Below the pieces are notes generated by a model. That model was not told the DNA's origin, did not search any database, and worked only from the letters and a program-made list of their open reading frames with translations. A program made the translations under genes and the position numbers. A stretch of 63,903 bases of DNA, the filler included, from Octopus bimaculoides (Eukaryota), in the NCBI RefSeq assembly GCF_001194135.2. It is 5 parts of 5 records of this genome, joined end to end, with 100 filler letters (N's around TTAATTAATTAA, not from the genome) between each part and the next. Parts side by side here need not be neighbours in the genome. Positions count along the whole stretch, not along the records: positions 30,573 to 55,349 come from NC_068982.1; 4 more parts are not named here. One strand, 5' to 3'. This document shows, piece by piece, positions 5,953 to 55,349 of the stretch (position 1 is its first letter; each line of letters starts with the position of its first letter).

Positions 5953-5958
5953 TATTAA

Positions 5959-6021
<63 letters not shown>

Positions 6022-6046
6022 CATCATCATTATTATTATTATTATT

Positions 6047-6213
6047 CAGTAGTTTTATTTTTATAACGTGCTTTCACTTCACTACCGAGCGCAGCTCTGT
6101 GCGCCTTGGGTATGTGCTGTGGTTTGCTGTGGTGCTCTTATGTTTACTGTATTGAAAGTGTTTTGCGTAGAATGTGTGCAGTACCCAGTAGTGCAATTTT
6201 CTGTATGTTATAT
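6047..6213 (-). mobile_element. R4/Dong-clade non-LTR retrotransposon 3' end
   Basis: ORF end NIQKIALLGTAHILRKTLSIQ*, short 3' UTR, then an (AAT)n tract. The rest lies in the N gap. Confidence 0.75.
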
Positions 6214-30572: not shown

Positions 30573-30669
30573 AAATCAAAATTTGTTTTTACATCATAAG
30601 AATTTAGAAACTTTGAGAGAACGTAAAATAATTTGTTTTTAACAGTTGAACAAAGCTATAAATATTAGC

Positions 30670-31543: not shown

Positions 31544-31642
31544 TTTAATAAATTCAATAAGTTTATTGTAAATGTGGGCCCCTTTTGGTAGGAAAAAGCA
31601 ACTTCCTGGACTTTGTTCATGAAAGAAAAACAGTTCTTGTTC
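31544..31642 (-). CDS. TARS1: ThrRS exon 10 [33 protein letters not shown] (last exon visible)
   Basis: tttcag acceptor, AAA/GTAGGT donor, 99 nt, phase 0-0. Confidence 0.96.
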
Positions 31643-34600
31643 CTGAAAAAGAGAATTGAAACAAATGGCAGGTTAAGTACAAGAAATCAAGATCCAGCGT
31701 TGATTTTCATTCTCTTTGATTCTTCCTAAACCCATTAAATATATATCCACAGCTATCACTTACAATCAAGTATGACTTTATGGCATGCACCATGCTTTCA
31801 CTACTTGTGTTACATACCTCTCTGTAGTTACAAATGGTTTGCTGCCCTCAAAATATCAAGGATATGACTGCTAGACTAAAAGGGGACTGTACTGGCAAGA
31901 AAATAACGCACCATCTAATCAAGGAACACAACTCACAACCTTATATTCATATGTGCCTTAACAAAGGGAAGTTAACACAACCAAAAACAAATTGACCATG
32001 GACAGCAATGGAACAAGAACCCACAACTGTTTGTCTCATTCCATCCGTAGCTTATCAAAAAGAAGGTTGTATTTCACAAAAAAACCTACAGGAATAAAGG
32101 TCAATTTTTTTATGTAATCAAGTTTCCTGTTACCTCCAAAATCACAATCACTCAACAGTGAAATAAGAATGAACTCTGTTGTCAGACTGCAGAAAACTGA
32201 GAATTCAGCACCAGTGCCAATAAGGGGAGGGAGGGGGTTTGTGAATTTGTCAGAACATCGGTTTGGAATCTGGAGAGCCAAAGAGGGGCCTATCTGTTGT
32301 ATCCTCAATTTCCTAAACAGGGCTCAGCCTCTTGAATTTTGAGAGGCTTCTGCCTCGATCCCTGAGGACTGTAAGTAGTTTTGATATGCCTTCCTAAAAT
32401 TCTCTTGGAGGCCTTGTCCAGAAGTATCACTTGAAAACCAGAACATTCAGTCACAGTATCATCATCATCATTTAACATCCACTTTTCTATGCTTGTATGG
32501 ATCAGACAGAATTTGTTGAGGTAGATACTTTTCAGCTGGATGCCCTTCCTGTTGCCAACCCTCATCTTTATTCAAACAAGGACGTTTTTCACAGAAGACT
32601 GGAAATGAACAACATCAGTTGTATGACAATAACACTTGTTTATGACAACACCTGGTGTCTAAAGAAGGCTACACAAAAACACATATATGACAGGTTTCTT
32701 TCAGTTTCCATCTATTAAATCCACTAACAGGGCTTCGGTCAGTCCAGAGCTAAATTAGAAGACACCCAAGGTGCCATACAGTAAGACTGAACCTAAGATC
32801 ACATTGTTGGGAAGCAAGCTTCTTAACCACATAGCCATGCACATGCCTATCTGAATAAAAGACAGATGATTGTGGAAGGAACATCTTTGACCATAATCGT
32901 CGCCACCACCACCACCACTATATTTCCATAAAGTTACCCCCACCCATGTTGTTGTTGTTGTTGGCACTCCGTCGCTTACGACGTCGAGGATTCCAGTTGA
33001 TCCGATCAACGGAACAGCCTGCTCGTGAAATTAACGTGCAAGTGGCTGAGCACTCCACAGACACATGTACCCTTAACGTAGTTCTCGGAGATATTCAGCG
33101 TGACACAGTGTGACAAGGCTGACCCTTTGAATTACAGGCACAACAGGAAGTAAGAGTGAGAGAAAGTTGTGGTGGAAGAATACAGCAGGGTTTGCCACCA
33201 TCCCCTGCCAGAGACTCGTGGAACTTTTAGGTGTTTTCGCTCAATAAACATTCACAACGTCCAGTCTGGGAATCGAAACCGCGATCCTATGACCGCGAGT
33301 CCGCTGCCCTAACCACTGGGCCATTGCACCTCCACCCCCACCCATGTTATACAGAAAAGAAACTAACCTTGCATCATAGAAGACAACAATGAAACATTCT
33401 ACTTACCCGGCCTATCTTACGATGGTCTCTCTTTGCTGCTTCCTCTTGCAAATGTTTCCATTCCTTCATTTGTTTTGGTTCTGGGAAGGATATACCATAT
33501 ATCCTGTTTAAAGATTCAGCCTCAGCCTTACCTTCCCAATAAGTGGAGGAATTCTACAGAAAAGAGAGAGGGGGGAGGAGAAAGAAAGTAGTATGTAAGT
33601 GGGAGGAAGATAAAAGAAAATGATGTATGGATAATTTATTCAGGAAAAAAATGATAATGTATGCGATGGGTACAAACTTTTAAAGGAGACTAGGTTAAGT
33701 CTGCCAGCTGCATTTTTGGCAGGAAAATACTACCATCACTCACTATCATGTAACTTTCTAATTATGACGTGTAGCTTTATAATTATTGACATGTAGCCTT
33801 TAACTATGATTACATGAAACTCCATAATTATGATACCATGTAGCTTATAGTTATGGCAACATCTAGCTTTACAATTATGACATGTAGCTTATAGTTATGA
33901 TAACATGTAGCTTTATAGTTATGATAACATGTAGATTTATAGTTATGATGACATATAGCTTTACAATGACAACATGCAAACCAAACAATAGAAATACATA
34001 AGTTTGTTTAGAGCAAAAAGTAATGTGACTTGACTAAGGATATATACATTGCAATGCCTGTAGCAGGGTTGGAACATATGCTTTTAATGAATGTCCAAGC
34101 CATTAGGCAGTAGAACATCAGGTGGTGTACTGTGATAAAATTAGGAAAAGTGAAAAGGGAAATAAAATATAAAAGAGAGAGTGAAAAAAAACCCCACTTT
34201 GAAAGTAAGTTTTTATAAAGGTGGTGAAAAACAAAATGAAAATTACCTTGGTAACAGCAAGAGCTTTCACTTTACCAGTGTGCCTTATGTGAGGCCCGCG
34301 ACACAAGTCAATCAGAGACCCACATCTGGTCAGAGAAGGAAAAATTTCATTTCAAAACAGTAAGAATTAAAATTATGTAGATTATTTTTCATATATCATC
34401 CTGTGATGCACCAAGATGCATCATCAGTGATGTTTCTTGGGGTCATCAGGTGTTTTGAATCTTTCAACATCAGATACACTGATTCCGGTTGACCCAGCCA
34501 AGGTTGATCAAACCCCAGCAAGTGTCCAGTTACCACTACCCTTGACAGCACTGCCTGCCCCTTCTAGGTTACCTCAAGAAAGCTGTGGATCAGGAGCTGT

Positions 34601-37600
34601 CTTGAGGTAATCTCCACTACCTCCACAGCCAACCTGATGACCTTCCTGCCTACTGGCTTGCAAACCCTCCGCATCTCACCTTAATGGAATACCACCTTGC
34701 TTCCCACTCATTGCTTTAGCATAGATCCACCAGCTTAACACATTTCCTCTTACTCTAGTACTAACAGATCCACCTGCTTGAATGCTTCTGAGATCAGCCC
34801 CACATCCAGCCTTAGTGATATCACTCTCCTCTCACTCTTATGAAATTATCTACCCTCTCCTTTTGCTCTTGATCCACTGTTTGTATTCTCTCATACTCCC
34901 CTCCTTGTACCGTGAAAGTTCATTTGGGTACTTCACCACCACCCTCTTTGTCTTTCTATCATACTTTAGCTTTGCAACAGCTGGCATAAGGTCACCTCCT
35001 CCTCTCTCAAGTATACTCTCCACACAGTGAAGAGGACTTTTTCTTTACTTTGTTTTGCAAATTATTTTACCTCATTAGTGCCAGGGGCATAAAAAGAAGC
35101 ACTCAATACAAAATGATTGGTGTTAGGAAGGGGTAGAAACCATGTCAAAACTGAGAGACTGGAGCTCAGTGCAGTTCTGCAAGCTGGTCAAATCCTGTCA
35201 ATCTGCCCAATCCATACCAACATAAAAAAATGAGTGAAGATGATGATGATAGTGGTGGTGATAATGATGATGATTTTTGAGTTCCCCCTATTTAGTTGGG
35301 GGGGCTTTTCTCCTTTTTCTGTCTTTCTGTTCTTTTATTGTGCAAGTTATGTGGCAACCTCACTAATGCTGGTGCCAGGAAAAAAGCATCCACTTCACTC
35401 TGTAAAGCAGCTTGGCATTAGGAAGAACATCCAGCTGTAGACACCATGCCAAACCTGATGCTGAAGCTTGATGTGGTCCTGCAACTTGCCCGGATCTTGT
35501 GAAACCATCCAACCCATGCCAGCATGGAAAACAGACAGTAAAGGATGATGATGATCATTAACTTTATCAAGCACTTGGAATCTTACCCACTTAATAATTA
35601 CATGTTTAGAAATATTGCTTGCTGTATGAGATTACATTTCAGATTATAACAATGTGTAATGAAGGAAACAAAATCTTGGAATGAATGAAGCTTTTTCTTT
35701 GTTTGTAGAGCAACCAAGTCTAAATAACTAATGATCAACAAGTCAGCTTTGATTGTAGACTCTTGAGTACCAATAAAAGGTTCGAGGGAAATGATTTTGT
35801 CCATCAATTTCACATATGTTTACGTAGGTAAATCATAAACATGATGAGATAAGAAAATCATGCTTTACTTACCGATATATCGTAGTTGTTGGCGTGGTGA
35901 CTTTCTCATTCAGAATTCTCTGCTTGAATTTGTTATACTAAAGAAAGAGAGGAAGAAAATTGGACAAAATTATCATTAATGCTATAATCCAGATTATTCT
36001 TAGGCTAGCAGGATTCTTTACAGGTCGTGATAAAACAATGAGCATCAGGCTGTAAAAATCCTTCCTCAAATGTTTTCTCATCTAACCTAATCAAGCATGG
36101 AAAAACAGACATCAAACAACAGAAAATCCAAAGAAATTACTGATGGAATAAATGATTTTGCTGTGAAGAAGAAAAGTCAGGCCCTTTACATAGAATCTTT
36201 TGTTGAGCAATTAAAATGTTAGACTTCACTTCCCCTAAAGCAAAGTAATTTATTCAATTTGAGAAATAAGTATATTAATCTAGTCAAAGTGAAAGTAGCT
36301 TTGTTCCAGCTGTAAATACCTTAAACATCTCTAAAAGATCTTCTTTCTTCACCTCTAATCTTTCAAAAGGTTGCTTCTCTTTCACTATTGACTTGACAGC
36401 AGTTTCAATGGCGTTATAATCATTACTCGATACTTGCCTGAAGCAAAAGATAGTATGTAATATAATGGAAGATGCGGAAACAGTTTGATGACTAAATAAA
36501 GGGATAAGTGAACTCGATACAGTAAAGTAAGAGAAAAAATGAAAGATCTTGTGTCAATTTCTATGTTTCAAGTGTAAAGTTATGGTGCAATAGAATGTAT
36601 ATTTTAAATGCGGATATCATAGCAAAATAGGTTTAATTTCAGAGTAGCCATCAGTCAGGAGCCTGCCCTGTGTCAAAGGGTCAGCCTGTTAAGACTCAGC
36701 AATTCCCTCTGTGCTGCATGCATACAATCAGTCAGGCTCTTGTTCCCAATCCATTCTTCCATGGTATCAGTCCACAAATGTCTTTAATGACCTCTTGGTC
36801 TCTTCCCCTCCACACTTTCTATCAGGATTGTAGGTAATGACTTGTGGTACATTGTTATGTCCAAAATACGACAACTTTGTGGACTTGATTCTTGACAAAA
36901 GGTGTCTTTAATTTTCAGCTTTTCTACTATTGTAGCATATGCTGCCCAGTTTTTCCAGCTTAATCTGTCCAATCTGCAAAAGATCTACAACTCAATGGTT
37001 TCCAGCTTTTTCTCCAACATAGTCCAAGTTCTTACCAAGTAGAGGACAATCAGCAAAATATAACAGTTTATTAGTCTCAATTTTAGGTGCAGTGTTCTGT
37101 CTTCTGACATGAAGGTCTTTTTCATACTTATAAATATTTTAGCCTTATTTATTAATTTCTTTTTCACAGTGACCTTCCTGATATATTATGTCCTAAAAAC
37201 TTGAAAGATTTTTTTAATTGTTCAAACTTCTGTCCATCTACCTCTACATTTGCCTCCTTTTGTTCTGTTTTACAAATAACTCACTATTGTCTTTGTCCTT
37301 TTTACATCCATATTCACCAATATTTAAATCTTCCCTATTACTGTGCTCCCTTACAACATGTAATTTCTCACTGCAGGGGTTGACTCACAAAGATTCAAGA
37401 GGAACAGTTTCGGCATCAATCTCATCAGATTAAGATCTGCAAAGGCCACGAGCAATGAGAGAGAGAGAGACACACACACACACACTGACAGAGCTCAGAG
37501 ACCTTGCAGTCTACCAATTTACTACCAGTGTTACACAGAAGAATAAAGAGAAATAATCTAATGCGTACAACTTTCTGTCCCCTATTTTGGCTTGGAGGTG

Positions 37601-40600
37601 GGGGAGGGGAGACATTAACAGTAACAAAAATACATACCCATCGTCAATGAACATGTCATAATAAAATCCTCCCTCAATTGGTGGTCCATAACAAAGGTGT
37701 CCACCATATTTCAGTTCCATGGCCTCTCCAAGAATATGTGCACTGGAATGCCAAAATACTTGTTTCCCTAGAATAAAAAAAAAAAAGAGTATATCAACTA
37801 AATATTGATTTCAAATCTTGGCATAAGGACAGCAAGTTCAGGGGAGGGGTAAGTCAATTACATCAACCCCAGTGCTCAATTGGTACTTATTTTATAGACC
37901 ACAAAAGGATAAAAAGCAAAGCTAACATCAACAGAATTTGAACTCAGAATCTAAAGATGGACAAAATGCCACTAAGCATTTTGCATGCTGTGCTAACGAT
38001 TCTGTCAGCTCACTACTTTATAGCAGTCAAATGTTAACATTACACATGATTGGCACGTGAAGCAGTGTCATGAAATAAACAAAACTTTTCCATAAGTTCA
38101 AATATCTTTGGGACATATTTGACCGGCATAGAGGCCACTTTCACTGCAGTTTGCCATGGAGAAAAATTCTTGCTTTAGACAAAAGCTTTAAGCACCAATG
38201 TCATTTCATAGCTACCACTATGAATTAATATATGCATTTCAAGCTACTTTGCATTCATTAGTATAAAATACCTAGCAGGACAACTAAGAAATGACTGAAA
38301 GATTTCGCTTCCTTATAAAAAAAATCAGTAGAAACCATTCACTGACTGTGTGCTGTGAACACCAAGCTGGGACAAAATATATGGGCCACATATGAAGTAG
38401 TCATCATCATCATCATTGTTTAACGTCCGCTTTCCATGCTAGCATGGGTTGGACGATTTGACTGAGGACTGGTGAAACCAGATAGCTACACCAGGCTCCA
38501 ATCTAATTTGGCAGAGTTTCTACAGCTGGATGCCCTTCCTAACGCCAACCACTCAGATAGTGTAGTGGGTGCTTTTACGTGTCACCCGCACAAAGGCTAG
38601 TCAGGCGGTACTGGCAACGGCCACGCTCAAAATGGTGCATTTTATGTGCCACCCGCACAAGAGCCAGTCCATGGGCACTGGCAACGATAAACAAGTTTTT
38701 TGTATTTAACCCTTTAGCAATCAGATTATTCTGTCAAAATGTAAAGCTTATTTATCCACATTGTTTTGAATCAATCATGCATTATCTCGTAGCTTTGAGA
38801 TGTCAATGATGTGACTATATACTTTTAGAATAACATTGTAGGGTAAGTGTAAGAGGCCAGACCTGGTTGGTTTGGACATAAAACAGGTAAAATATTTGGG
38901 TTGGATAAAGCCAGTTTAAATGTTAAAGGGTTAAATATTGTGACTACAGTGAAATTGTTTAGATAAATAAACCAGATATTTTTACCTTCATCATCATCAA
39001 ATTTTAAAAACTTGATGGTGCAATCTTTTTCCAGTGGGCGTTCGATATCCCACAATTCATCATTCACCTTGGATATCACAGTGTTATCAGCCAGTCCCTG
39101 ACTGAAAAATACAACAAACATTATCTTTAATATATATATATATATAATGTAGTTCCATGATGGTAAAATCAACAAAAAAATGTATTCCATCTGGTGAGAG
39201 ATAAATATTATATAATATACACGTGTTTATATATGTTACTAATAGTTTCAAGTTTTAGTTCATTATGATATGTAGTTTGTGTTTGATGAAAATGTTTGAG
39301 GTATTTCTCAACATATGAAACTACTAGTAGCCCACATAAACATAAACATGTATTGTGTATATTAAATAATATATATATATATATATGAGATGGCAGAATA
39401 TTTGCAGAATAGGAAAATGTCATGCATTATTAGATCAGTCCCCCACTATCACAGAGGATCTCTTCTACAAAAGCACATCCTTAAAACAGTTAAGATTATA
39501 TTCTGATAACTGACCCTTCTCTTCAGTGCCAGAAAGTACTTCAACACCCAAAGTTTACTGAAATTCTACAAAGCTCAGTACTGCTGTCACATTTGTGACA
39601 GGGCTGCTACTGTATACAAGACTGCTTTTAAAAAAAGGACTGACTGGCATGAAGGTGCCTAGCTTAGTGGTTAGGATGTTGAACTAATGATCGTAAGATT
39701 GTGATTTCGATTAATGAACTGGGCAATGCGTTGTGTTCTTGAACAAAACATTGAGCCAGCAAAAATGAGTATTCCAGTGATGGACCGTCTGTCCAGTGGG
39801 GAGTATAAATATACCAGAGAATCCAGAAAACCTGCCCTATGAGTCTATGTGACACAGAAAGGAGTGACTGGCATGACATTACTCACAGACAGCCTCCAGC
39901 TTCTGACCCACAGGCTTTTCTACTGCTGCTATAATGGCCTTGTAGCTGGCCAGGCTCATGTTACTCTCATACCACTAACCTCTTTCCCCCTTTCATTACC
40001 TTTATTGCATCCAACCCACAGGTTCCATGCTAACTGCTACACCTAGTTCTCCCTTTCCAGAATATCAGCCCTCTGGAAATCTCTCCCTGCTCATGTTGAC
40101 TTAAAAAAGGTTCAAGAGGAATATTAATGGTAAGGCCTATGAAGGCCAGGGACTATCTCCCACCTCCCTCCAGACCTGGCATTCATTATTTTAATGTCCA
40201 CTTTTCCATGCTTGCATGGGTCAGAAAATCTGTTGAGCCAAATTTTTTATGGCTGGATACTCTTCCTGTTGCCAACCTTCACCTCTTTCCAAATAAGGTT
40301 ATAATTTCTCATGACTGGACATGTTTCCATGGAAGATTGGAGACAAAGGACACTGTTTGCATGACAGTCATCTACAACTATCACATGAACTTAGGGCAAG
40401 GAGACAGTAATGCACACATATGCTTAAATTCTGTTTTTTTTTAAAGGATTTTTCGCATTTTGCATTAATGCAGGCATGTAAGTAATTTATTCATTATCAA
40501 ATATAATAGAATAAATTATTTACATGCTTTTAAGTTATGAAACAATTTGTCGTGATATTAGAATTTTCTTATTGTTAAATGAAGTTTCATCAAACTATTT

Positions 40601-40657: not shown

Positions 40658-43600
40658 TTAGTAAATGGAGTAATACACATATGTTAAATGAATTCTTTTA
40701 TTTCAACATATGTTTCGAAGATTACAAATGGTTCCTTCTACAGGAATAGGTGATGTTGATAAAGATGTAATCTTCTCTTCAGGGAAATACATAGGAACCA
40801 GCTTAACCGTAAGACATTTTAACCGAATGTGATAACTGTAGGTAGAGAATATTGCTACGTANNNNNNNNNNNNNNNNNNNNNNNNNNNNNNNNNNNNNNN
40901 NNNNNNNNNNNNNNNNNNNNNNNNNNNNNNNNNNNNNNNNNNNNNNNNNNNNNNNNNNNNNNNNNNNNNNNNNNNNNNNNNNNNNNNNNNNNNNNNNNNN
41001 NNNNNNNNNNNNNNNNNNNNNNNNNNNNNNNNNNNNNNNNNNNNNNNNNNNNNNNNNNNNNNNNNNNNNNNNNNNNNNNNNNNNNNNNNNNNNNNNNNNN
41101 NNNNNNNNNNNNNNNNNNNNNNNNNNNNNNNNNNNNNNNNNNNNNNNNNNNNNNNNNNNNNNNNNNNNNNNNNNNNNNNNNNNNNNNNNNNNNNNNNNNN
41201 NNNNNNNNNNNNNNNNNNNNNNNNNNNNNNNNNNNNNNNNNNNNNNNNNNNNNNNNNNNNNNNNNNNNNNNNNNNNNNNNNNNNNNNNNNNNNNNNNNNN
41301 NNNNNNNNNNNNNNNNNNNNNNNNNNNNNNNNNNNNNNNNNNNNNNNNNNNNNNNNNNNNNNNNNNNNNNNNNNNNNNNNNNNNNNNNNNNNNNNNNNNN
41401 NNNNNNNNNNNNNNNNNNNNNNNNNNNNNNNNNNNNNNNNNNNNNNNNNNNNNNNNNNNNNNNNNNNNNNNNNNNNNNNNNNNNNNNNNNNNNNNNNNNN
41501 NNNNNNNNNNNNNNNNNNNNNNCGGGTGGCACATAAAAGACACCATTTCAAGCGTGGTCGTTGCCAGTATCGCCTGACTGGCCTTCGTGCAGGTGACACG
41601 TAAAAGCACCTACTACACTCTCTGAGTGGTTGGCGTTAGGAAGGGCATCCAGCTGTAGAAACTCTGCCAAATTTAGATTGGAGCCTGGTGTTGTCATCCG
41701 GTTTCACCAGTCCTCAGTCAAGTCATCCAACCCATGCTAGCATGGAAAGCGGACGTTAAACGATGATGATGATGATATATATATATGTTGTCTTCTTTCA
41801 GTTGCTGTCTACTAAATCCACTAACAAAGCTTTGGTTGGCCTTAGCTATAGTATAAAATAATTGCCCAATTCCACACAGTGGGACTGAATCCAAAAGCAT
41901 GTGAGTAAAAGCGAAAAAAAAAAAAAATAAAAAATAAAAAGCCAGTCCTTATTGAAGTTGAAATTCCAAGGTGTCCAAGCCAATCCTTACCTGATTCCTT
42001 TAGCAATCTCATAGGGAGTTGTGCGCCATGATTGACCTTTTACTTCTTTACCATCAGGCAACGTAATTGTAATATCTACACTTGGTTGAGCTGCCAACCA
42101 ATTATTGTAGGACTCCTTCCATTTATTCCACAAATCTAGTCGGGTTTGGATGTAATCAGGAGGTGGTTTTACCTGAAACAATGAATTTATTTTAATTATT
42201 TTATCTTTATATTAGATATTAACAAAACAAGGTCATAAATTCAAATCTTCTTACTGCTCTACCCCCCACTGCCTTTGTTTTTAATTAAGCTTGTAAATAA
42301 TGAAGAATTTAGTAAAATAACTCTGTTGTTATTAATCTGGTACTTGGAACATAAATATAGAATTCTGATAGAAAGTTTTGATTGGGCTAGTATCAAAAGG
42401 GTAAGTGGTGGAGGCGCAATGACTCAGTGGTTAGGGCAGCGGACTCGCGATCATAGGATCAGTTTCGATTCCCAGACCGGGCGTTGTGAGCGTTTATTGA
42501 GCGAAAACACCTAAAGCTCCACGAGGCTCTGGCAGGGGATGGTGGCGAACTCTGCTGTACTCTTTCACCACAACTTTCTCTCACTCTTACTTCCTGTTTC
42601 TATTGTACCTCTATTTCAAAGGGACCAGCCTCGTCACACTGTGTCACGCTGAATATCCCCGAGAACTATGTTAAGGGTACACCTGTCTGTGGAGTGCTCA
42701 GCCACTTGCACATTAATTTCATGAGCAGGCTGTTCCGTTGTTTGGATCAACTGGAACCCTCGACGTTGTGCCAACAACAACAACAACAACAACAAAAGGG
42801 TAAGTAGCTTTCCCTTCCTCATACATGTGAAGGAAGGGGCCAGTATTGTTGTTAGATGGTCACTGAAATAGATTACAAACATAGTGAGAGGCAGTGTAGA
42901 TGTTTAGAGGGAGGGACATGATTTTACTTAGAAATGAAATAGTTAAACCAAGTACAATCTTTTATTTGTTCCAGTCATTATACTGCAGTCGTGCTGGGGC
43001 ACCGCCTTGGAGAATTTTTAGTCAAATGAATTGACCCCAGTACTTACTATTATTCTTTTTTTAAGCCTGATATTTATTCTATCAGTCTCTTTTGCTGAAC
43101 TACTAAGTTACAGGGATCTAAACACACCAGTTGTCAAGTGGTAGTGGAGAACAAACAGACACAAAGACACACTATATATATATTGGATAATGGAACTGCA
43201 ACTATAACATCCAACATATTTTTATTTTTATTCTCTTAGTTCCTTTTATACTTCTTATTTCCATCCTTTTCTAAAATAACTCCTTATATTGAACTCTACT
43301 ATTTCCTCTATTTAACCATCTCACATCATCTCTGATGAAGGGATAAGACTTTCTCTTTTATAAATGTCCTGAAAATTCCGCACAGCTTTGGCATTGTTGT
43401 CTCATTTTATTTAACACACACACATACAGTGGACTTATTTCAGTTTATGTCTCACAAGGCTTTGGTCAGTGCAAAGCTATAGTAGAAGACTATAGCATGC
43501 TGTGGGACTGAACCTGAAACCATGTGGTTGGGAAGGAAGCTTCTTACCACACAGTCACTATATTTTAAACACATTTTCAATGTAAGTCTTTATCAGGATT

Positions 43601-43864
43601 AGAATGTGAGTTACACATTGTGTCATCAATGAACAGAAATAAAGACTGATGATGATGTCAAAATCTAACGTAATTTCAGTATTATAAATCCTAAACCACA
43701 CAGACACACTTGTGCCTATGCATATTAGCAGAATTCCCATCCAAGCTAAGAGGGTGGAAAAAAATTAATGTAAAATAAATATGAAATAATAAAAAAAGTT
43801 TACCTCTGAACAAGTGTTGTTCTTATTCTTATCCTCTTTTGATTTTTTCGTATTTTTAGATGCC

Positions 43865-43896
<32 letters not shown>

Positions 43897-46800: not shown

Positions 46801-47249
46801 NNNNNNNNNNNNNNNNNNNNNNNNNNNNNNNNNNNNNNNNNNNNNNNNNNNNNNNNNNNNNNNNNNNNNNNNNNNNNNNNNNNNNNNNNNNNNNNNNNNN
46901 NNNNNNNNNNNNNNNNNNNNNNNNNNNNNNNNNNNNNNNNNNNNNNNNNNNNNNNNNNNNNNNNNNNNNNNNNNNNNNNNNNNNNNNNNNNNNNNNNNNN
47001 NNNNNNNNNNNNNNNNNNNNNNNNNNNNNNNNNNNNNNNNNNNNNNNNNNNNNNNNNNNNNNNNNNNNNNNNNNNNNNNNNNNNNNNNNNNNNNNNNNNN
47101 NNNNNNNNNNNNNNNNNNNNNNNNNNNNNNNNNNNNNNNNNNNNNNNNNNNNNNNNNNNNNNNNNNNNNNNNNNNNNNNNNNNNNNNNNNNNNNNNNNNN
47201 NNNNNNNNNNNNNNNNNNNNNNNNNNNNNNNNNNNNNNNNNNNNNNNNN

Positions 47250-50200: not shown

Positions 50201-53200
50201 TTGATGTGAAATATCTGAAAGTGACAAGATGTTTATAGTTTCTATAGCTGGACAACTTTACAGTGTGAACCAGGTGTTTTTTTCTTCTTTTTCATGATCC
50301 AATCATTCAAAAATTCATCACCAATTTTGAGTTCACCTCAAACTTCCCTGGAGATCATTCCAAGTATTCAAGACTCTCACAAAACGAATATTTCCTCATG
50401 TTCAGTTTCGATTAAAGTTTGTATATTTTTTTTTATCATACTGCTTTTTCTTCCTGTTCACAAATTTCTCTGACATAGATTTTGAGGGAACCCGTGGAAG
50501 AGGTAGGCCCAGGAAGACCTGGGCTGAGGTGGTGAGGCAAGACCTTCGTACATTGGGCCTCACCGAGGCGATGACTACTGACCGAGACCTTTGGAAATGT
50601 GCTGTGCGTGAGAAGACCCGGCAAGCCAAGTAAGATCGTTGCCAGTGCCCCTGGACTGGTTCTTGTGCGGGTGGCACATGAGATGCACCATTTTGAGCGT
50701 GGCCATTGCCAGAACCGCCTGACTGGCTCCCGTAGGATTTTCAAACGAGATCGTTGCCAGTGCCCCTGGACTGGCTTGTGCGGGTGGCACATAAAAGACA
50801 CCATTTCGAGCGTGGCCGTTTTCGTGCGGGTGACACGTAAAAGCACCCACTACACTCTCTGAGTGGTTGGCGTTAGGAAGGGCATCCAGCTGTAGAAACT
50901 CTGCCAAATCAGACTGGAGCCTGGTGTTGCCATCTGGTTTCACCAGTCCTCAGTCAAATCGTCCAACCCATGCTAGCATGGAAAGCGGACGTTAAACGAT
51001 GATGATGATGATGATGATGATGTTAAAACCTCTCATGGGCAAACTTTCATTTTATGATCTAGAAAGTGAAAACACTGAACTAGACAGAGAGCAGCACAAT
51101 AAAATGAAAGTAAAATAATGTTCAGTAGTATTTGATAAAAATCAGCAATAAAATAAAACTAAATGAATTCTCATGAAAAAGAAAATTATTTTGGCACCAC
51201 AAATACTGTTAATACCAAAAAAACTATTGGATTCTATCTGGAGTTAGTGGAATAGCAGAGTCTTAAATGTGTATCTTGTATGAAAGTATATCCAGTTTAT
51301 TGCTCATCATCACAAGGCATGCCCTGCCAGAGATCTGATCCGTAACTACCCTACAATATACCTTCCAACTATTGCTAAATTATTATCATCAACATTTAAC
51401 GTCTGTTTTCCATGCTGTGGCAGGGGTTGAACAGTTTTTGCCAGTATCACTCACTGATAAACTATGCAGCTTCACACGGAAACACCATAGAAGGGATAGG
51501 CAGTAAAATTGACTACAAACATTGTCATGAATGGGATAGGAGGCAATCTCTTTAACATCTATTTACAGGAATTTTGCTGATGTTGTTCTTTATAAACAGA
51601 ACACATTTATACATGAGTCTTATCCTCTCACAATTTGGTTTAATTTAAAATAAAATCTTATAAAGCATTACACATAAGTAAGTTTGGCTTATCTAATTTT
51701 TTGGGGGCTACTGCAGTTTCACACCTCACCTTGCAAAATGCATTTTTTTGAAAACATTTCTTCAGATTCCTAGGTTTTAGATGTCGGGATTACGAGTATG
51801 CAAAAAAAAAAAAATTCAAAATTTGGATTTTTGGAGGATATTGCAGAGCACAAAAAAGAAAAAAGGATTTCTTATTCCAGTTGATGATAGGAAAGAAAAA
51901 AACTTAGTTACCATTGAGCTGGGATCAATAACATATTCCAATAAATGGAGTTCGTATAAGAACATTGAAGAGAAGCTATGTTTCAAACATTATAATGTCA
52001 ACCATTCTAATAATTTCGTTGACCCCATTACTGGTTGCCATACAAACTCAGTAGAAGGTATGTATGCAAACGCTAAAGCCAAATTTAAACCAATAATGGA
52101 CCCACAGATAGACAACTAATTGACCTGCATTTACCTGAATTTATGTGGGCCCAGCGATTTATCATTTTTGGTGTTACATTGTCTCGTATATCTATAAATC
52201 GTAGATCGTATATTAGATATTTGTTTCACTTTCTATTTTTAATGTATTGTTGTATAGTGAAGAGAGGAAATGTCATTAGAGCAGGTATGTAAAGAGCACT
52301 TTCTATGTTCATATGGCTAAACAATAGAGATTGTTAAAATCCCGTATTTTTCCACGTAGATTAAAAAAAAAAAATTAGTAACATTTTGAAAACGTGTTTT
52401 TTTTTTTTTGCATATAAAATCTTATAAATAAAGCATCTAAAACCTAGGACAATATCAGTTGATAAAAATATTTTTGTTTACCCTAATTTATACAATAGAA
52501 ACATCAAAACTATATAATGTACACTCCCGTAAACATATTTGTGTAGAAAGTCATTTAAAAATATGTATTTCAAAAAGTGTTATGAGGAAAAACAGCCGGG
52601 AGGGTATTGAAAATTATCTGAAACTCCACTTAAAAATTTATTAACGTTACCGACAAAATCGTGACCTACGCCTTCGAAAACCTATCTACAAAATCTAATT
52701 AAATAATGCGCATTTTTGCAGACAGTTATGAGAAAACGGAGTCGGGTAGGGGCACCAAACTGCAGTTATGCTACAGAGGTATCACGAAGGGCCTGCGTGG
52801 AAGCCCAACCGAGTTCTTTTATAGGGCTTAGGAAAACCGAAGGACCACTGCAGTGTGTGAATCTGAGAGGAGGAATATGCTGAGCAAAATCATAATTAAC
52901 AGATATTCTCGTATTTTCCTTTTTCCAAAACCAGGAACTTTTCAGCACCCCTCGTGTATGTGTATTCTTTTATGTAGGTTTCCTTTTGTTTATGTTCCGA
53001 AATATATTTTCAGTTTCAAAGAAAACAATTCTTTCCCTTCGATTTTACTAACGAGTTTCCAGCTGGGGACAGTCTCTGCTGAGTACAGTGGGTTCATTTT
53101 CTGGATCGTAAAACAAAGACTACTTCTTTCATGTTTCCATAGAATCTGTAAATTGGTAAAAAAACCTGCTTCCTAAGCACTTCCTCATATACCACAAGCT

Positions 53201-54220
53201 CCGTAGATCTACATTGTACATTTTCTACCATTTCGATGTACTTTACGTTGTACGAGTGTCGTATTTCAGGTGCAGCCTTAACTAATACTGTGTACTATGT
53301 TTTAATGTCTTCGTTTAATGTGCTGAAAGACCCCTTTATAAGTCCCACCAACCTGTGGTTCTTTATATATTTTCTCTGGAGTTTAGGGAGAACTTGACGT
53401 AGGAAATGAATAGCGACCATTCCAGTTGTGTTTGGAATTCAATGTCTCTAACCTTAGTTCAATTCGATGAGGGGCGACCTTGGGGCTAAACAATAATGCC
53501 GGAATGTGACAGACTTCCCTTTAAGTCAAATATGTAAGACATAACTAAACATAATAGATATTTCGCTGACCTCAACATAAACCTGTCCACGTAAGTTAAA
53601 GAAAAACAAATCAATTGATCAATACATATAGAGAAAGAAAGAAAAAAACTTATAAAATTGATTTTTCGGTGCTTTTAGGTAGTAAATCGTTACAAGTTGG
53701 ACGTATTTCTTATTGCATTTTTTGCCTTGCTGTGTTTTTTTTTTTAAATATACATAATGAAATTAATATTTCGGGTACGATAAGAGAACGAATTATAACA
53801 GTATGAGGCGACGAATAAAGAAATGGTGGGAAGTAGCATCAAAATTATTATTAACCAAGCAAAACAGTTAGTTGAAATAACTAAATCTACTACAGGGATC
53901 ACACACAAATTAGAGTCGAGCAGAAAGGAGAGTGTATAACATATATATATATATATATGTACATAAATGTATGTAAAATCTAAGGAGGCAATATCAACAC
54001 ACACCGACTGAATGACGAGAAACTCACACACACCCTAGTTAAAGTCTTCGCGTATCGCAATCCTATTCTCTGCGACAACGAAGAAAGACGTGTCCAGGAA
54101 AGCATATTTGAGTTTTGCTAAATTAGTAAGAAGTGTAAAAGTTTACATAATCCTGCATGCCTTTTTCTCTCCGGAAACTTTCAACTCCTCCATCGGTTTC
54201 GTCAGCACTTCGTCAGCCAT
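31544..54220 (-). CDS. TARS1: Threonyl-tRNA synthetase (eukaryotic cytosolic-type ThrRS), 5' half only; 10 coding exons, 1056 nt = 352 codons
   Basis: Exons assembled by hand with AG/GT boundaries (first donor GC). Phases chain without a break and give the TGS domain (TLPDGK...[23 protein letters not shown]), editing domain ([33 protein letters not shown]) and start of the catalytic core ([30 protein letters not shown]). These match human TARS1 as I recall it. Confidence 0.97.
32951..33335 (-). mobile_element. SINE-C
   Basis: Same family; TSD CCCCACCCATGTT. Confidence 0.9.
33407..33553 (-). CDS. TARS1: ThrRS exon 9 [49 protein letters not shown]
   Basis: ctgtag acceptor, CGG/GTAAGT donor, 147 nt, phase 0-0. 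Confidence 0.97.
33762..33976. repeat. Degenerate 21-24 bp minisatellite (CATGTAGCTTTATAGTTATGATAA-like)
   Basis: About ten imperfect units in ThrRS intron 8. Confidence 0.85.
34247..34325 (-). CDS. TARS1: ThrRS exon 8 (R)[26 protein letters not shown]
   Basis: gaccag acceptor, AAG/GTAATT donor, 79 nt, phase 2-0. Contains the DLCRGPH editing motif. Confidence 0.97.
35873..35937 (-). CDS. TARS1: ThrRS exon 7 [21 protein letters not shown](R)
   Basis: ctttag acceptor, CG/GTAAGT donor, 65 nt, phase 0-2. Confidence 0.96.
36320..36437 (-). CDS. TARS1: ThrRS exon 6 (G)[39 protein letters not shown]
   Basis: cttcag acceptor, AAG/GTATTT donor, 118 nt, phase 2-0. Confidence 0.96.
36640..37170 (-). 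pseudogene. RTE-clade LINE ORF 3' fragment, degenerate
   Basis: LKLRLINCY...[11 protein letters not shown]...RLSW...SVEGKRPRG. Confidence 0.7.
37638..37767 (-). CDS. TARS1: ThrRS exon 5 (G)[42 protein letters not shown](G)
   Basis: ttctag acceptor, GG/GTATGT donor, 130 nt, phase 1-2. Contains the editing-domain HxxxH motif. Confidence 0.97.
38400..38690 (-). mobile_element. RTE 3' UTR copy
   Basis: Same family, with (CAT)n at the left end on the plus strand. Confidence 0.85.
38706..38934. mobile_element. piggyBac-type MITE
   Basis: TTAA-CCCTTTAGCA ... TGTTAAAGGG-TTAA. Confidence 0.8.
38986..39101 (-). CDS. TARS1: ThrRS exon 4 (S)[38 protein letters not shown](G)
   Basis: tttcag acceptor, G/GTAAAA donor, 116 nt, phase 2-1. 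Confidence 0.97.
40699..40789 (-). ncRNA. Type I minimal hammerhead ribozyme motif, sense within ThrRS intron 3
   Basis: Minus strand reads TATTTC-C-CTGAAGA-GAAGATTACA-[39 nt]-TGTAATCTTC-GAAAC-ATAT-GTT-GAAATA. Intact CUGANGA and GAAA cores, perfect 10-bp stem II, 6-bp stem I with one extra C, palindromic stem III loop. Confidence 0.75.
41523..41776 (+). mobile_element. RTE 3' UTR copy
   Basis: Same family, (GAT)n tail, emerges from the N gap. Confidence 0.85.
41991..42172 (-). CDS. TARS1: ThrRS exon 3 [15 protein letters not shown]...[12 protein letters not shown](S)
   Basis: tttcag acceptor, AG/GTAAGG donor, 182 nt, phase 0-2. Start of the TGS domain. Confidence 0.97.
42407..42792 (+). mobile_element. 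SINE-C
   Basis: Same family; TSD CAAAAGGGTAAGT. Confidence 0.9.
43185..43415 (+). mobile_element. Penelope-like fragment P2 nested in the central microsatellite of a SINE-A copy
   Basis: TCTCTGATGAAGGGATA...TGTCCTGAAA at 43329-43374. Splits a minus-strand SINE-A into two halves. Confidence 0.45.
43804..43863 (-). CDS. TARS1: ThrRS exon 2 [20 protein letters not shown]
   Basis: Long poly-T tract plus CAG acceptor, GAG/GTAAAC donor, 60 nt, phase 0-0. Lys-rich linker that joins exon 3 in frame. Confidence 0.85.
46316..46554 (-). mobile_element. RTE 3' UTR copy
   Basis: Nearly identical to the reverse complement of 50770-51010; runs into the N gap. Confidence 0.85.
49280..49669 (-). mobile_element. 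SINE-C
   Basis: Same family; TSD GATCAGTGA(T/C)AAT. Confidence 0.9.
49786..50008. mobile_element. piggyBac-type MITE, same family, reverse orientation
   Basis: Reverse complement of the 38706 family; right end degenerate. Confidence 0.6.
50484..51022 (+). mobile_element. 5'-truncated young RTE LINE (ORF C-terminus, repetitive 3' UTR, (GAT)n tail)
   Basis: [49 protein letters not shown] (stop 50631-50633). The GATCGTTGCCAGTGCCCCTGGACTGG unit is duplicated in the UTR. Confidence 0.85.
51705..52775 (+). mobile_element. Degenerate Merlin (IS1595/ISXO2-like) DNA transposon
   Basis: ORF remnant [12 protein letters not shown]...[24 protein letters not shown]. Inverted ACTGCAGTTT near both ends and inverted CCTAGGTTTTAGATG subterminal copies. 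Confidence 0.7.
54028..54105 (-). CDS. TARS1: ThrRS alternative exon 1b, putative mitochondrial targeting peptide [26 protein letters not shown]
   Basis: ATG at 54105-54103. 26 codons with 4 R + 1 K, no D/E, rich in S/T/L. Ends in phase 0 at a consensus GTGAGT donor (54027-54022), in frame with exon 2. Confidence 0.78.
54161..54220 (-). CDS. TARS1: ThrRS exon 1a (cytosolic-type start) [20 protein letters not shown]
   Basis: ATG at 54220-54218 in good context (caacATGG). 20 codons, acidic/Lys-rich. Phase-0 junction at AAG/GCATGC (GC donor). Confidence 0.75.
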
Positions 54221-54238: not shown

Positions 54239-54257
54239 TGCGCATGCGCTACCGGAA
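54239..54257. promoter_or_regulatory. ThrRS proximal promoter: NRF-1-type palindrome TGCGCATGCGC plus adjacent ETS-like ACCGGAA
   Basis: GCGCATGCGC at 54240-54249, about 20 bp upstream of the exon 1a ATG; ACCGGAA at 54251-54257. Motif match only. Confidence 0.6.
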
Positions 54258-54773: not shown

Positions 54774-55349
54774 TGTGGTATTATGGGCTGTGATGAGCTG
54801 TGTGTTGTGGTGGAGAGGGGTGAGGCAAACAGAGGTGAAGCCAGACCGGAAGGGTCAGATCGGAAGTCGGCGACACGCGGTCGAAGGCTAGCACGTGGAG
54901 TCAGTCAGAAAACAGCGACGTTACGAGAAAGACGTGTTCTGATCAGGAGCGATCGTGTACTCCGCTGCGGTCGGCAAGGTAAGGTCCAACGTTTCATTCT
55001 GTCCTTTTGCTTCTTCCTCCATCTCACCCATAAGACAAAAAATTATGAGTGTAGTCCGGATTTCTAGTGATATAATTAAACCGTTTTGCGGCGACACGGA
55101 CGTGGTCGCATGGCTAAAGAAGATGAAGCTGGTCGCGAAACTCCAAGGGATATGCGACTTGGCAAGTTTTCTACCGCTCTACTTGGATGGTCCGGCGTTG
55201 GCGCTATTTTTAGAGATGGAAGAGAGGGACCAAGTTAGCGCGGAGAAAATAGAAATCCGCTTGATGGAGGCCTTCGCAGAAGGAATGTTTGAGGCGTACG
55301 CTCGCCTGGGGAGAGCGAAGTGGACCGGCGAACATGTTGACGTGTTTGC
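54774..55349 (+). mobile_element. LTR (54774-55037) plus gag-like ORF start (ATG 55045), truncated by the assembly spacer
   Basis: Segment bounded by TGT..TTATGGG / CCCATAA..ACA. Uninterrupted ORF MSVVRISSDIIKPFCGDTDVVAWLKK...PLYLDGPALALF...YARL resembles a retrotransposon gag. GC-rich with CpGs intact. Confidence 0.7.

What the first reader, a model, noticed from the sequence alone, without database searches (positions are those of the whole stretch)
54028..54105. Hidden alternative first exon encoding a mitochondrial presequence: one ThrRS gene for two compartments
Seen: a 26-codon ORF below the ORF-track cutoff, [26 protein letters not shown]. Net charge +5, no acidic residues, S/T/L-rich, with candidate R-2/R-3 processing sites (LRY/A, RVC/AS). 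It ends at a perfect GTGAGT donor in phase 0, the same phase as the exon 2 acceptor, and lies 55 bp downstream of an acidic alternative first exon. Established: cleavable presequences have this composition, human KARS1 and GARS1 are dual-targeted, and as I recall Drosophila and C. elegans use one ThrRS gene for both compartments while vertebrates have a separate TARS2. Inference: this exon makes the mitochondrial ThrRS isoform.
Basis: partly seen in the sequence, partly recalled or inferred. Interest (0 to 1): 0.85.

Follow-up and report, generated by a model that had tools for sequence, protein, structure and literature searches.

The report
Mitochondrial leader exon in ThrRS gene
A tiny 24-26-codon exon just after the normal start of this animal's only visible threonyl-tRNA synthetase gene very probably adds a mitochondrial import signal; this is an expected solution also present in snails and sea slugs, not a new kind of system.

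Summary
On the minus strand, ATG 54105 opens [26 protein letters not shown] (net +5, no acidic residue). It ends at GTGAGT in phase 0 and matches the phase-0 acceptor of exon 2 (43863) of a TARS1-type ThrRS gene.

Composition alone is weak evidence, because one other ORF in intron 1 looks similar. Comparison is decisive. Lymnaea, two Elysia species and four environmental animal contigs share one layout:
- a 19-20-codon acidic start exon ending AAAAAG|GCATG(A/C), a conserved GC donor;
- a stop 2-6 codons later;
- 26-55 nt further, a 23-25-codon basic ORF ending at a phase-0 GT donor.

Lymnaea and Elysia chlorotica gene models splice this ORF to exon 2. A full-length environmental cDNA carries the acidic ORF unspliced as an upstream ORF ahead of the presequence-ThrRS ORF.

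The literature says non-vertebrate bilaterians lack a separate mitochondrial ThrRS gene.

- exon 1a uses a GC donor;
- exon 1b has two tandem in-frame donors;
- the switch is more likely alternative 5' splice-site choice within one leader than a separate first exon.

No RNA or cephalopod data could be reached, and localisation is untested. This is a new member of a known kind (zebrafish hars and KARS1 logic).

The parts
54240..54249 (.). NRF-1-like palindrome GCGCATGCGC, 20 nt upstream of the exon 1a ATG; probable core-promoter element
   Evidence: the only match in the window, against 0.05 expected by chance. Its function is inferred from the known NRF-1 consensus (own knowledge).
54161..54220 (-). 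Exon 1a coding part: [20 protein letters not shown], the start of the cytosolic isoform. AUG context AACAACAUGG.
   Evidence: It resembles the conserved metazoan cytosolic ThrRS N-terminus (Elysia MAENVAEGVKKMDLSDNKK, fish MADQTVVEKMSEMQVD..KK).
54155..54160 (-). GC-type 5' splice site of exon 1a (AAG|GCATGC), phase 0
   Evidence: AAAAAG|GCATG is identical in all nine 1b-bearing loci compared. A GC donor at the same exon end (GCATGA in E. crispata, GCAAGA in Candidula) is used by their gene models. The in-phase GT alternatives inside exon 1a score very poorly.
54143..54145 (-). TAA that ends the exon 1a frame if the GC donor is not used, giving a 25-codon upstream ORF
   Evidence: A stop 2-6 codons after the GC donor is present in all nine loci.
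54106..54142 (-). 37-nt spacer between the upstream-ORF stop and the exon 1b AUG
   Evidence: the spacer is 26-55 nt across the nine loci.
54028..54105 (-). Exon 1b coding part: [24 protein letters not shown](VC), a presequence-like peptide. It ends at 54034 or 54028 depending on the donor used.
   Evidence: It is homologous to Lymnaea MFSSRISLLRIAKRLGSTYLRTKSM, Elysia MFSPRISFLRFAKRLGSTY[VL]RAHRM and L012 MLSRFALSPLHRRLGTKLSRFMGTR.
54022..54033 (-). Two tandem phase-0 GT donors: AGG|GTGTGT (54033..54028) and TGT|GTGAGT (54027..54022)
   Evidence: The upstream donor aligns with the L012 (CGG|GTGTGT) and gastropod (ATG|GTTTGT) donors. Which one is used is unknown.
43864..43896 (-). 29-T polypyrimidine tract plus ACAG acceptor of exon 2
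43804..43863 (-). Exon 2: [20 protein letters not shown], the lysine-rich N-extension. Phase 0 at both ends and common to both isoforms.
   Evidence: Equivalent short K-rich exons occur in Lymnaea and L012.
41991..42172 (-). Exon 3: [15 protein letters not shown]...TLPDGKEV..., the start of the TGS domain
   Evidence: Pfam TGS, E = 5.6e-17.
31544..39101 (-). Exons 4-10 of the ThrRS gene: 39101..38986, 37767..37638, 36437..36320, 35937..35873, 34325..34247, 33553..33407, 31642..31544. All are GT-AG. The gene runs off the piece at 30573.
   Evidence: tRNA_SAD, E = 1.1e-10. The assembled protein is 69-72% identical to animal ThrRS.

Best explanation
The piece holds the 5' half of a TARS1-type threonyl-tRNA synthetase gene, which most likely makes two proteins from one leader region.

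Route 1 (inferred). Transcripts start near the NRF-1-like site. The weak but conserved GC donor at the end of exon 1a (54161|54160) is joined to exon 2 (43863). This gives the cytosolic enzyme, beginning [27 protein letters not shown]...

Route 2 (inferred here; seen as a cDNA in another animal). The GC donor is skipped and a GT donor 127-133 nt further on is used (54034|54033 or 54028|54027).
- In that mRNA the exon 1a ORF stops at TAA 54145..54143 and becomes a 25-codon upstream ORF.
- Ribosomes that reinitiate or scan past it start at AUG 54105.
- The product is [24 protein letters not shown](VC)-ASKNTKK...-ThrRS.
- Its basic, acid-free, amphipathic N-terminus acts as a cleavable matrix-targeting presequence. 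The enzyme would then charge mitochondrial tRNA-Thr.

The weak GC donor and the upstream ORF together would keep the mitochondrial form a minor product.

Shown: the sequence features, their phases, and their conservation in other animals.
Inferred: splicing in this organism, the mode of translation, import and cleavage.

Confidence is about 0.85 that exon 1b is a real coding exon for a mitochondrial isoform, and about 0.6 that the switch is alternative donor choice with exon 1a as an upstream ORF.
For: 1. Anatomy. Exons 1a, 1b and 2 are all phase 0. All other introns are GT-AG.

2. Exon 1a can only reach exon 2 through the GC donor. The in-phase GT sites inside it score -8.3 and -3.3. The GC site scores 3.9 without its +2 position. 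The gene's other donors score 0.1 to 8.2.

3. The same module occurs in Lymnaea stagnalis, Elysia crispata, E. chlorotica and environmental loci L012, L011, L004/L019 and L018. It consists of:
- exon 1a of 19-20 codons;
- AAAAAG|GCATG[AC];
- a stop within 2-6 codons;
- 26-55 nt to an AUG;
- a 23-25-codon ORF with net charge +4 to +7 and no acidic residue;
- a phase-0 GT donor in the eight genomic loci (in cDNA L018 the junction is already spliced).
The genomic frame offset between 1a and 1b varies (0, 1 or 2), so they are two independent ORFs.

4. Gene models use both routes.
- Lymnaea P0004 and E. chlorotica P0147 join 1b to exon 2 at exactly the predicted donor.
- E. crispata P0029 and Candidula P0010 join 1a to exon 2 through the GC donor.
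- The transcript-derived protein P0140 is the 1a form.

5. L018 is a full-length polyadenylated cDNA with adaptor ends. The complete 1a ORF, including the unspliced GC site, precedes the presequence-ThrRS ORF of 728 aa.

6. Coding-type constraint. Between E. chlorotica and E. crispata, 1b differs by three synonymous changes and one conservative change. Lymnaea and Elysia use CGG versus AGA for the same Arg.

7. The window's 1b is similar to its homologues beyond composition. The summed alignment score is 152; 0 of 2000 shuffles reach it, and it ranks top of 254 null ORFs.

8. Presequence properties. Net charge is +5, there is no D/E, and the hydrophobic moment is 0.56. That is comparable to the yeast COX4 presequence (quoted from memory) and exceeded by about 2% of random ORFs.

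9. Need. mt-ThrRS is absent in bilaterians except vertebrates (PMC4558845). One ThrRS gene is dual-localised in C. elegans (shown experimentally, PMC10196762) and in Drosophila (predicted, PMC4826098).

10. GC donors are enriched in first introns and in alternatively spliced genes (PMC7242645, PMC2490688).

11. Zebrafish hars uses the same logic: the cytosolic AUG is followed quickly by a stop in the mitochondrial mRNA (PMC5608375).
Against: - No RNA data for this organism could be reached, and no sequence from any cephalopod.
- The protein search lists only proteins up to about 1.75 times the query length, so full-length ThrRS entries were invisible.
- No trained predictor (TargetP, MitoFates) was available. 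The presequence call rests on simple physicochemical measures.
- The source organisms of L018, L011, L004/L019 and L012 are unknown.
- L018 is a single cDNA and could be a minor or incompletely processed species.
- The exon 1a AUG has a strong context (A at -3, G at +4). Translation of 1b from a leader that retains it would be inefficient.
- A transcription start inside or after exon 1a would avoid that problem and cannot be excluded.
- Candidula shows the GC donor but no recognisable 1b nearby.
- A second basic ORF with a phase-0 GT donor exists in intron 1 (53420..53349).
- The absence of a second ThrRS gene in this genome was taken from the literature, not tested.
Confidence: 0.7

Rival explanations
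1. Exon 1b is a true alternative first exon. A second transcription start lies between the exon 1a AUG (54220) and the 1b AUG (54105). Mitochondrial-isoform mRNAs therefore lack the 1a start codon, and no upstream ORF or reinitiation is involved. The protein outcome is the same; only the switch differs.
For: TATA-less promoters with NRF-1-type sites usually start over a broad zone (own knowledge). The strong AUG context of exon 1a would make a retained 1a ORF costly for 1b translation.
Against: Only 55 nt here, and 32-62 nt in the other loci, separate the GC donor from the 1b AUG, so any such start must lie inside exon 1a. The one full-length cDNA available (L018) starts 187 nt upstream of the 1a AUG and retains the whole 1a ORF. 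A stop is conserved just after the GC donor in all nine loci. That is expected if the 1a frame is read through in some mRNAs.
Confidence: 0.2
2. The ORF is a chance feature of intron 1 and is never part of an mRNA. The mitochondrial ThrRS is supplied in some other way, for example by another gene or another exon.
For: 26 open codons are not rare in AT-rich DNA. Another basic, acid-free ATG..|GT phase-0 ORF lies in the same intron at 53420..53349. There are no expression data for this organism.
Against: The position, length, phase, charge pattern and sequence are conserved in gastropods and other animals. Two gene models splice the homologous exon to exon 2. Substitutions between the Elysia species are of the synonymous type. 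The region is unique in the piece and is not a repeat.
Confidence: 0.05
3. Exon 1b is expressed, but its main role is not mitochondrial import. For example, the retained leader with its small ORFs could serve translational control of ThrRS, or the basic N-terminus could direct the enzyme elsewhere.
For: The leader holds two small upstream ORFs: the 1a ORF and the ATG inside GCATGC. Gastropod promoters carry a TGACGCAA-like motif that resembles amino-acid-response elements (resemblance from own knowledge). Localisation is untested.
Against: The peptide has no hydrophobic core of signal-peptide type, and it has the charge and amphipathicity of matrix presequences. Animals without a separate mt-ThrRS gene must import a ThrRS (PMC4558845). 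In C. elegans, N-terminal extensions of the same enzyme were shown to be functional mitochondrial targeting sequences (PMC10196762). The coral Porites lacks the module; cnidarian mitochondrial genomes do not encode tRNA-Thr (own knowledge).
Confidence: 0.05

Closest known systems
Zebrafish hars (single gene for cytosolic and mitochondrial HisRS; PMC5608375)
   Same: One gene serves both compartments. The upstream AUG gives the cytosolic form. In the mitochondrial mRNA that AUG is followed quickly by a stop, and a second AUG in the extra sequence starts the presequence-bearing protein. Both N-termini join the same body.
   Different: In zebrafish the extra sequence is a 300-bp cassette exon 2. 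Here it is an extension of exon 1, reached by skipping a conserved GC donor (alternative 5' splice site). The enzyme is also different (ThrRS).
Human KARS1 (alternative splicing of the first exons gives cytosolic and mitochondrial LysRS; cited in PMC10196762, original Tolkunova et al. 2000)
   Same: Dual localisation is achieved by alternative splicing at the 5' end of one aaRS gene, which swaps a short N-terminal peptide.
   Different: The exon arrangement differs and the enzyme is of another class. The details of KARS1 are recalled from the literature and were not tested here.
C. elegans tars-1 (PMC10196762)
   Same: It is the same enzyme and has the same need. A single ThrRS gene supplies both compartments, and the longer N-terminus is an experimentally proven mitochondrial targeting sequence.
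   Different: In the worm the presequence lies upstream of the cytosolic start in one ORF of one mRNA, so two AUGs are used. Here the order is reversed, the two starts are in separate ORFs with a stop between them, and splicing is required.
Drosophila ThrRS (CG5353, listed as C+M; PMC4826098) and other arthropod models with the presequence upstream of an internal Met (P0005, P0015, P0025, P0083)
   Same: A single gene gives two polypeptides, and the longer one is predicted to be mitochondrial.
   Different: The presequence precedes the cytosolic Met in the same reading frame. There is no GC-donor module.
Vertebrate TARS2
   Same: It performs the function that the 1b isoform is proposed to fill: a mitochondrial ThrRS derived from the cytosolic lineage (PMC4558845).
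   Different: It is a separate gene that arose by duplication in vertebrates, and it lacks the lysine-rich extension (own knowledge). Here one gene does both jobs and the mitochondrial form keeps the K-rich exon 2.

Membership tests
Eukaryotic TARS1-type threonyl-tRNA synthetase | N-terminal TGS domain followed by the editing-associated tRNA_SAD domain | tested here: met
   Pfam TGS E = 5.6e-17 and tRNA_SAD E = 1.1e-10, both above the curated cut-offs. The protein is 69-72% identical to animal ThrRS.
Eukaryotic TARS1-type threonyl-tRNA synthetase | Class II catalytic core and anticodon-binding domain | not testable with these tools
   The gene runs off the piece at 30573, after the residue equivalent to human TARS1 ~361.
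Dual-localised aaRS gene (one gene, cytosolic plus mitochondrial isoform) | Two alternative N-terminal coding segments, each joining the common body in frame | tested here: met
   Exons 1a and 1b end in phase 0 and exon 2 starts in phase 0. Both junction types appear in gene models of related species.
Dual-localised aaRS gene (one gene, cytosolic plus mitochondrial isoform) | One N-terminus has matrix-presequence properties and the other does not | tested here: met
   Exon 1b has net charge +5, no acidic residue and a hydrophobic moment of 0.56. Exon 1a has net charge -1 and five acidic residues. No trained predictor was available.
Dual-localised aaRS gene (one gene, cytosolic plus mitochondrial isoform) | Both mRNAs are expressed in this organism | not testable with these tools
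   No transcript data for the source organism were available. Indirect support comes only from other species (cDNA L018; gene models).
Dual-localised aaRS gene (one gene, cytosolic plus mitochondrial isoform) | No separate mitochondrial paralogue in the genome | not testable with these tools
   Only a 24.8-kb piece is available. The literature says mt-ThrRS is absent in bilaterians except vertebrates (PMC4558845).
Dual-localised aaRS gene (one gene, cytosolic plus mitochondrial isoform) | The long isoform localises to mitochondria | not testable with these tools
   This needs an experiment, such as a GFP fusion or cell fractionation.
Two-AUG, single-mRNA type (C. elegans tars-1, human GARS1) | The presequence and the cytosolic start lie in one continuous ORF, with the presequence upstream | tested here: not met
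   Exon 1a lies upstream of 1b, in a different frame, with TAA 54145..54143 between them. There is no in-frame extension upstream of the 1a ATG: a TAG lies 14 codons up, with no ATG before it.
Alternative-splicing type with the cytosolic AUG converted into a short upstream ORF (zebrafish hars) | In the mitochondrial mRNA the first AUG is followed quickly by a stop, and a downstream AUG opens the presequence ORF | tested here: met
   At the sequence level, the stop lies five codons after the GC donor and the 1b AUG lies 37 nt later. This arrangement was observed as RNA only in L018, not in this organism.
GC-AG intron | GC at intron positions +1 and +2, an otherwise good donor context, and an AG acceptor | tested here: met
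   The donor is AAG|GCATGC and the acceptor is T29-ACAG|. The donor is conserved in nine loci. A GC donor at the same exon end is used by the E. crispata and Candidula gene models. Its use in this organism is inferred.

The most novel reading that the evidence does not exclude
The exon 1a / GC donor / stop / presequence mini-exon arrangement may be an ancient, conserved splice-and-translation switch. It is shared by cephalopod-like and gastropod molluscs and by at least one more distant, unidentified animal lineage. A deliberately weak GC donor competes with a downstream GT donor, and the cytosolic start ORF is re-used as an upstream ORF. Together these would set a low, fixed ratio of mitochondrial to cytosolic ThrRS. 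This mechanism has not been described for ThrRS and differs from the worm and fly solutions.
Probability: 0.45. Interest if true: 0.5.

Novelty: new member of a known kind. Interest (0 to 1): 0.4.

Why it matters
Animals outside the vertebrates have lost the separate mitochondrial ThrRS gene, yet most still encode mitochondrial tRNA-Thr. Each lineage must therefore send part of its single ThrRS into mitochondria. How this is done has been shown experimentally only in C. elegans.

This locus and its gastropod counterparts show a second, splice-based solution with a conserved GC donor. Three practical consequences follow:
- **Annotation.** Automatic gene models pick one isoform or the other and rarely both. 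Exon 1b is unannotated in the Elysia crispata and Candidula models, and exon 1a is unannotated in the Lymnaea and E. chlorotica models.
- **Prediction.** It corrects predictions of which enzymes reach the mitochondria in molluscs.
- **Experiment.** It offers a compact natural case for studying competition between GC and GT donors, coupled to reinitiation after an upstream ORF.

It does not change any general principle.

Tried and rejected
- **Protein searches for cephalopod ThrRS N-termini.** None were found. All listed hits were at most about 1.75 times the query length (185, 627 and 430 aa).
- **Exact look-up of the L018 protein.** It is a singleton cluster with no name. The accession prefixes of the environmental contigs are not mentioned in any searchable paper. 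The source organisms therefore stay unknown. By similarity, L012 is closest to Lymnaea (76%), while L011 has no clear affinity.
- **Candidula.** The GC donor is present, but no 1b-like ORF lies near exon 1a and the back-translated KRLGSTY motif is absent. The exon may be lost, diverged or elsewhere in a large transposon-filled intron.
- **Zebrafish tars1 locus.** It is not on record, so I could not test whether vertebrates keep the GC donor.
- **GT donors inside exon 1a.** AAA|GTTTCC and GAA|GTGCTG are in phase but score very poorly and are not conserved. ...AT|GTAAAC is in the wrong phase and would run into a stop in exon 3 (reasoned).
- **Exon 1b as a cassette behind a 44-nt mini-intron (TTAG| at 54117).** It would be in frame but would bury the presequence internally, and the intron is implausibly short.
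- **Cleavage-site motifs (LRY|A, RVC|AS).** These are not conserved in the homologues, so no site is claimed.
- **Other contigs from the metagenome scan.** Eleven of the 16 pattern hits (L005-L010, L013-L017) gave no ThrRS-like first exon.
Full report
**What is in the sequence**

On the minus strand the piece carries the 5' half of a threonyl-tRNA synthetase gene. A tblastn with human TARS1 (sequence recalled from memory), followed by inspection of the splice sites, gives these exons:
- exon 2: 43863..43804
- exon 3: 42172..41991
- exon 4: 39101..38986
- exon 5: 37767..37638
- exon 6: 36437..36320
- exon 7: 35937..35873
- exon 8: 34325..34247
- exon 9: 33553..33407
- exon 10: 31642..31544

All are flanked by GT-AG. 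The gene runs off the piece at 30573. The assembled protein has TGS and tRNA_SAD domains. It is 69-72% identical to animal ThrRS.

The reported ORF is exactly as described:
- ATG at 54105 opens 26 codons, [26 protein letters not shown].
- It has four Arg, one Lys and no acidic residue.
- GTGAGT follows at 54027..54022, in phase 0.
- Exon 2 begins in phase 0 after a 29-T tract.

The acidic [23 protein letters not shown] (54220..54161) ends 55 nt upstream.

1. Exon 1a has no usable in-phase GT donor.
   - The only site that links it to exon 2 in frame with a reasonable context is a GC donor, AAG|GCATGC.
   - The two in-phase GT sites inside the exon score -8.3 and -3.3 on a simple donor matrix. 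The GC site scores 3.9 (its +2 position not counted), and the gene's other donors score 0.1 to 8.2.
   - If the GC donor is not used, the exon 1a frame stops at TAA 54145..54143.
2. Exon 1b has two tandem phase-0 donors 6 nt apart: AGG|GTGTGT and TGT|GTGAGT. The exon is therefore 24 or 26 codons long.

**Is it more than chance?**

By composition alone, only partly.
- Among 254 ATG-started 26-codon open stretches in the piece, this is the only one with net charge >=+5, no acidic residue and a helical hydrophobic moment >=0.56.
- However, intron 1 holds 132 phase-0 ATG..|GT candidates. One other (53420..53349) is similarly basic and acid-free.
- The promoter/1a/1b region is single-copy in the piece and is not part of a repeat.

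**Comparative evidence**

This is what settles the matter. The protein database returned no cephalopod sequence but did return gastropod models. I fetched their loci.

- **Lymnaea stagnalis (L001).**
  - The annotated first exon encodes ...MFSSRISLLRIAKRLGSTYLRTKSM|GTTTGT and is spliced to a K-rich exon 2.
  - Immediately upstream and unannotated lies ATGGCGGAGAAC...AATAAAAAG|GCATGA, encoding MAENVAEDIENMEISDNKK.
- **Elysia crispata (L002).** The model starts with MAENVAEGVKKMDLSDNKK and uses the GC donor AAG|GCATGA. Thirty-three nt later lies an unannotated ORF, MFSPRISFLRFAKRLGSTYVRAHRM|GTTTGT.
- **Elysia chlorotica (L020).**
  - The model P0147 uses that ORF spliced to exon 2. The acidic exon with its GC donor lies just upstream.
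  - The two Elysia 1b exons differ by three synonymous changes and one conservative change. Lymnaea and Elysia encode the same Arg with CGG versus AGA.

A pattern built from the exon 1a start and the GC donor found five more true ThrRS first exons in environmental assemblies: L012, L011, L004/L019 and L018.

A table of all nine loci shows the same module in each:

| Feature | Range across the nine loci |
|---|---|
| Exon 1a length | 19-20 codons |
| Exon 1a donor | AAAAAG\|GCATG[AC] |
| Stop after the donor | within 2-6 codons |
| Distance from that stop to the next AUG | 26-55 nt |
| Exon 1b length | 23-25 codons |
| Exon 1b net charge | +4 to +7, no acidic residue |
| Exon 1b donor | phase-0 GT in the eight genomic loci; already spliced in cDNA L018 |

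The genomic frame offset between 1a and 1b varies between 0, 1 and 2. L012's exon (MLSRFALSPLHRRLGTKLSRFMGTR|GTGTGT) even shares the first nine nucleotides and the ...ACT-NGG|GTGTGTG end with the window's exon.

The window peptide's summed alignment score to six homologues is 152. None of 2000 composition-preserving shuffles reaches it, and it tops the 254 null ORFs.

**RNA-level evidence**

This exists only outside the organism.
- L018 is a full-length cDNA of 5174 nt. It has a poly(A) tail and the same 12-mer, inverted, at both ends.
- Its leader contains the whole 1a ORF (MADDVAKGVSNLTMEDGKKAC*) with the GC site unspliced.
- This is followed by the main ORF MLLARAFGRISARPLVARCKRIM-SSEAKASGKGNKKKEKK... 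and a complete 728-aa ThrRS.
- In at least one animal, therefore, the presequence isoform comes from the same leader. Exon 1a serves as an upstream ORF: an alternative 5' splice site, not a separate promoter.
- A transcript-derived protein (P0140) shows the 1a form.

A coral (Porites lutea) has one continuous first exon with a GT donor and no 1b. This fits the fact, from my own knowledge, that cnidarian mitochondrial genomes do not encode tRNA-Thr. It is a single case.

**Literature**

- Lu et al. list Drosophila ThrRS as dual-localised, with two polypeptides (PMC4826098).
- Guo et al. show experimentally that C. elegans tars-1 makes both forms from two AUGs of one mRNA. They call it the first ThrRS case with a defined mechanism (PMC10196762).
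- Zebrafish hars works by the logic proposed here. In the mitochondrial mRNA the exon 1 AUG is followed quickly by a stop, and a second AUG starts the targeted protein (PMC5608375).
- GC donors are enriched in first introns and in alternatively spliced genes (PMC7242645; PMC2490688).

**Most likely mechanism**

1. Transcription starts near the unique NRF-1-like palindrome GCGCATGCGC, 20 nt upstream of the exon 1a ATG.
2. Use of the weak GC donor gives the cytosolic enzyme.
3. Skipping it and using the GT donor(s) 127-133 nt downstream gives an mRNA in which exon 1a is a 25-codon upstream ORF. AUG 54105 then opens the presequence-ThrRS precursor.
4. The precursor is imported and processed. The cleavage site is not determinable, because the candidate motifs are not conserved.

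I put about 0.85 on exon 1b being a real coding exon for a mitochondrial isoform. I put about 0.6 on the alternative-donor/upstream-ORF switch, as against an internal transcription start.

**Comparison and novelty**

- The locus works like zebrafish hars and human KARS1 (splice-based N-terminal swap). It does not work like C. elegans tars-1 or the arthropod models, where the presequence lies upstream in one ORF. That membership test fails here.
- Dual-localised aaRS genes are a known kind, and single-gene ThrRS in invertebrates is expected.
- The homologous exon is already used in two gastropod gene models, but never annotated together with the other isoform.
- The finding is therefore a new member of a known kind. 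The conserved GC-donor/stop/mini-exon module is the one feature that I did not find described.

**Limits**

- No RNA, no close relative and no trained targeting predictor were available.
- The absence of a second ThrRS gene rests on the literature.

Noticed in passing
window 54240-54249: A perfect NRF-1-type palindrome, GCGCATGCGC, lies 20 nt upstream of the exon 1a ATG. It is the only match in the window (0.05 expected by chance). It may be the core promoter element of the ThrRS gene.
   Followed up: partly
L001 ~9915-9925; L002 ~2960-2970; L003 ~2950-2960; L020 ~2880-2890: Gastropod ThrRS promoters carry a TGACGCA(A)/TTGCGTCA motif 20-40 nt upstream of the exon 1a ATG. It resembles C/EBP-ATF (amino-acid-response) composite sites. 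The window has the NRF-1-like site instead.
   Followed up: no
window 53349-53420 (minus strand): A second basic, acid-free ATG ORF lies in intron 1: [24 protein letters not shown], ending at a phase-0 TTG|GTGGGA. Its similarity to the conserved 1b peptides is weaker than that of 1b (summed score 115 against 152). It is probably chance.
   Followed up: partly
window 35367-35546, 38415-38688, 41523-41764, 44750-44906, 45821-45982, 46329-46554, 50560-51000: A SINE-like repeat family occurs in both orientations inside the ThrRS introns, at 72-99% identity. Two copies abut the assembly gaps. The copy at 50560-51000 contains an internal ~75-nt direct duplication.
   Followed up: partly
window 40862-41522 and 46555-47249: Runs of N (assembly gaps) lie inside intron 3 and intron 1. 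Anything hidden there, including further alternative exons, cannot be seen.
   Followed up: no
window 51781-52119 (+ strand): A 112-aa ORF in intron 1 gives a weak ISXO2-like transposase (DDE_Tnp_IS1595) match, E = 7e-4, below Pfam's cut-off. It is probably a transposon remnant.
   Followed up: partly
window 54955-55349 (+ strand, cut by the piece's edge): An ORF of more than 130 aa diverges from the ThrRS promoter, about 735 nt away: ...FCGDTDVVAWLKKMKLVAKLQGICDLASFLPLYLDGPALALFLEM... It has a retrotransposon-Gag-like motif pattern by eye but no Pfam hit.
   Followed up: partly
window 54156-54158 and the equivalent position in L001, L002, L011, L012, L018, L020: The conserved GC donor contains an ATG (GCATG). 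In Lymnaea it is in frame with 1b, and the gene model starts there. Elsewhere it opens a second tiny upstream ORF, such as [11 protein letters not shown] in the window. In six of the nine loci (Lymnaea, both Elysia, L011, L004/L019) GCATGA also supplies the TGA stop of the 1a frame.
   Followed up: partly
L003 (Candidula unifasciata) 2969-3030: The land snail keeps exon 1a and a GC donor (AAG|GCAAGA), but no 1b-like ORF was found in the next 3.5 kb and the motif was absent from the locus. The intron holds a reverse-transcriptase ORF (5503-6753). Exon 1b may have been lost or displaced.
   Followed up: partly
(tool behaviour): In all three protein searches no listed hit exceeded about 1.75 times the query length (185, 627 and 430 aa). 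Short queries therefore cannot retrieve full-length homologues. This probably hid any cephalopod ThrRS entries.
   Followed up: no
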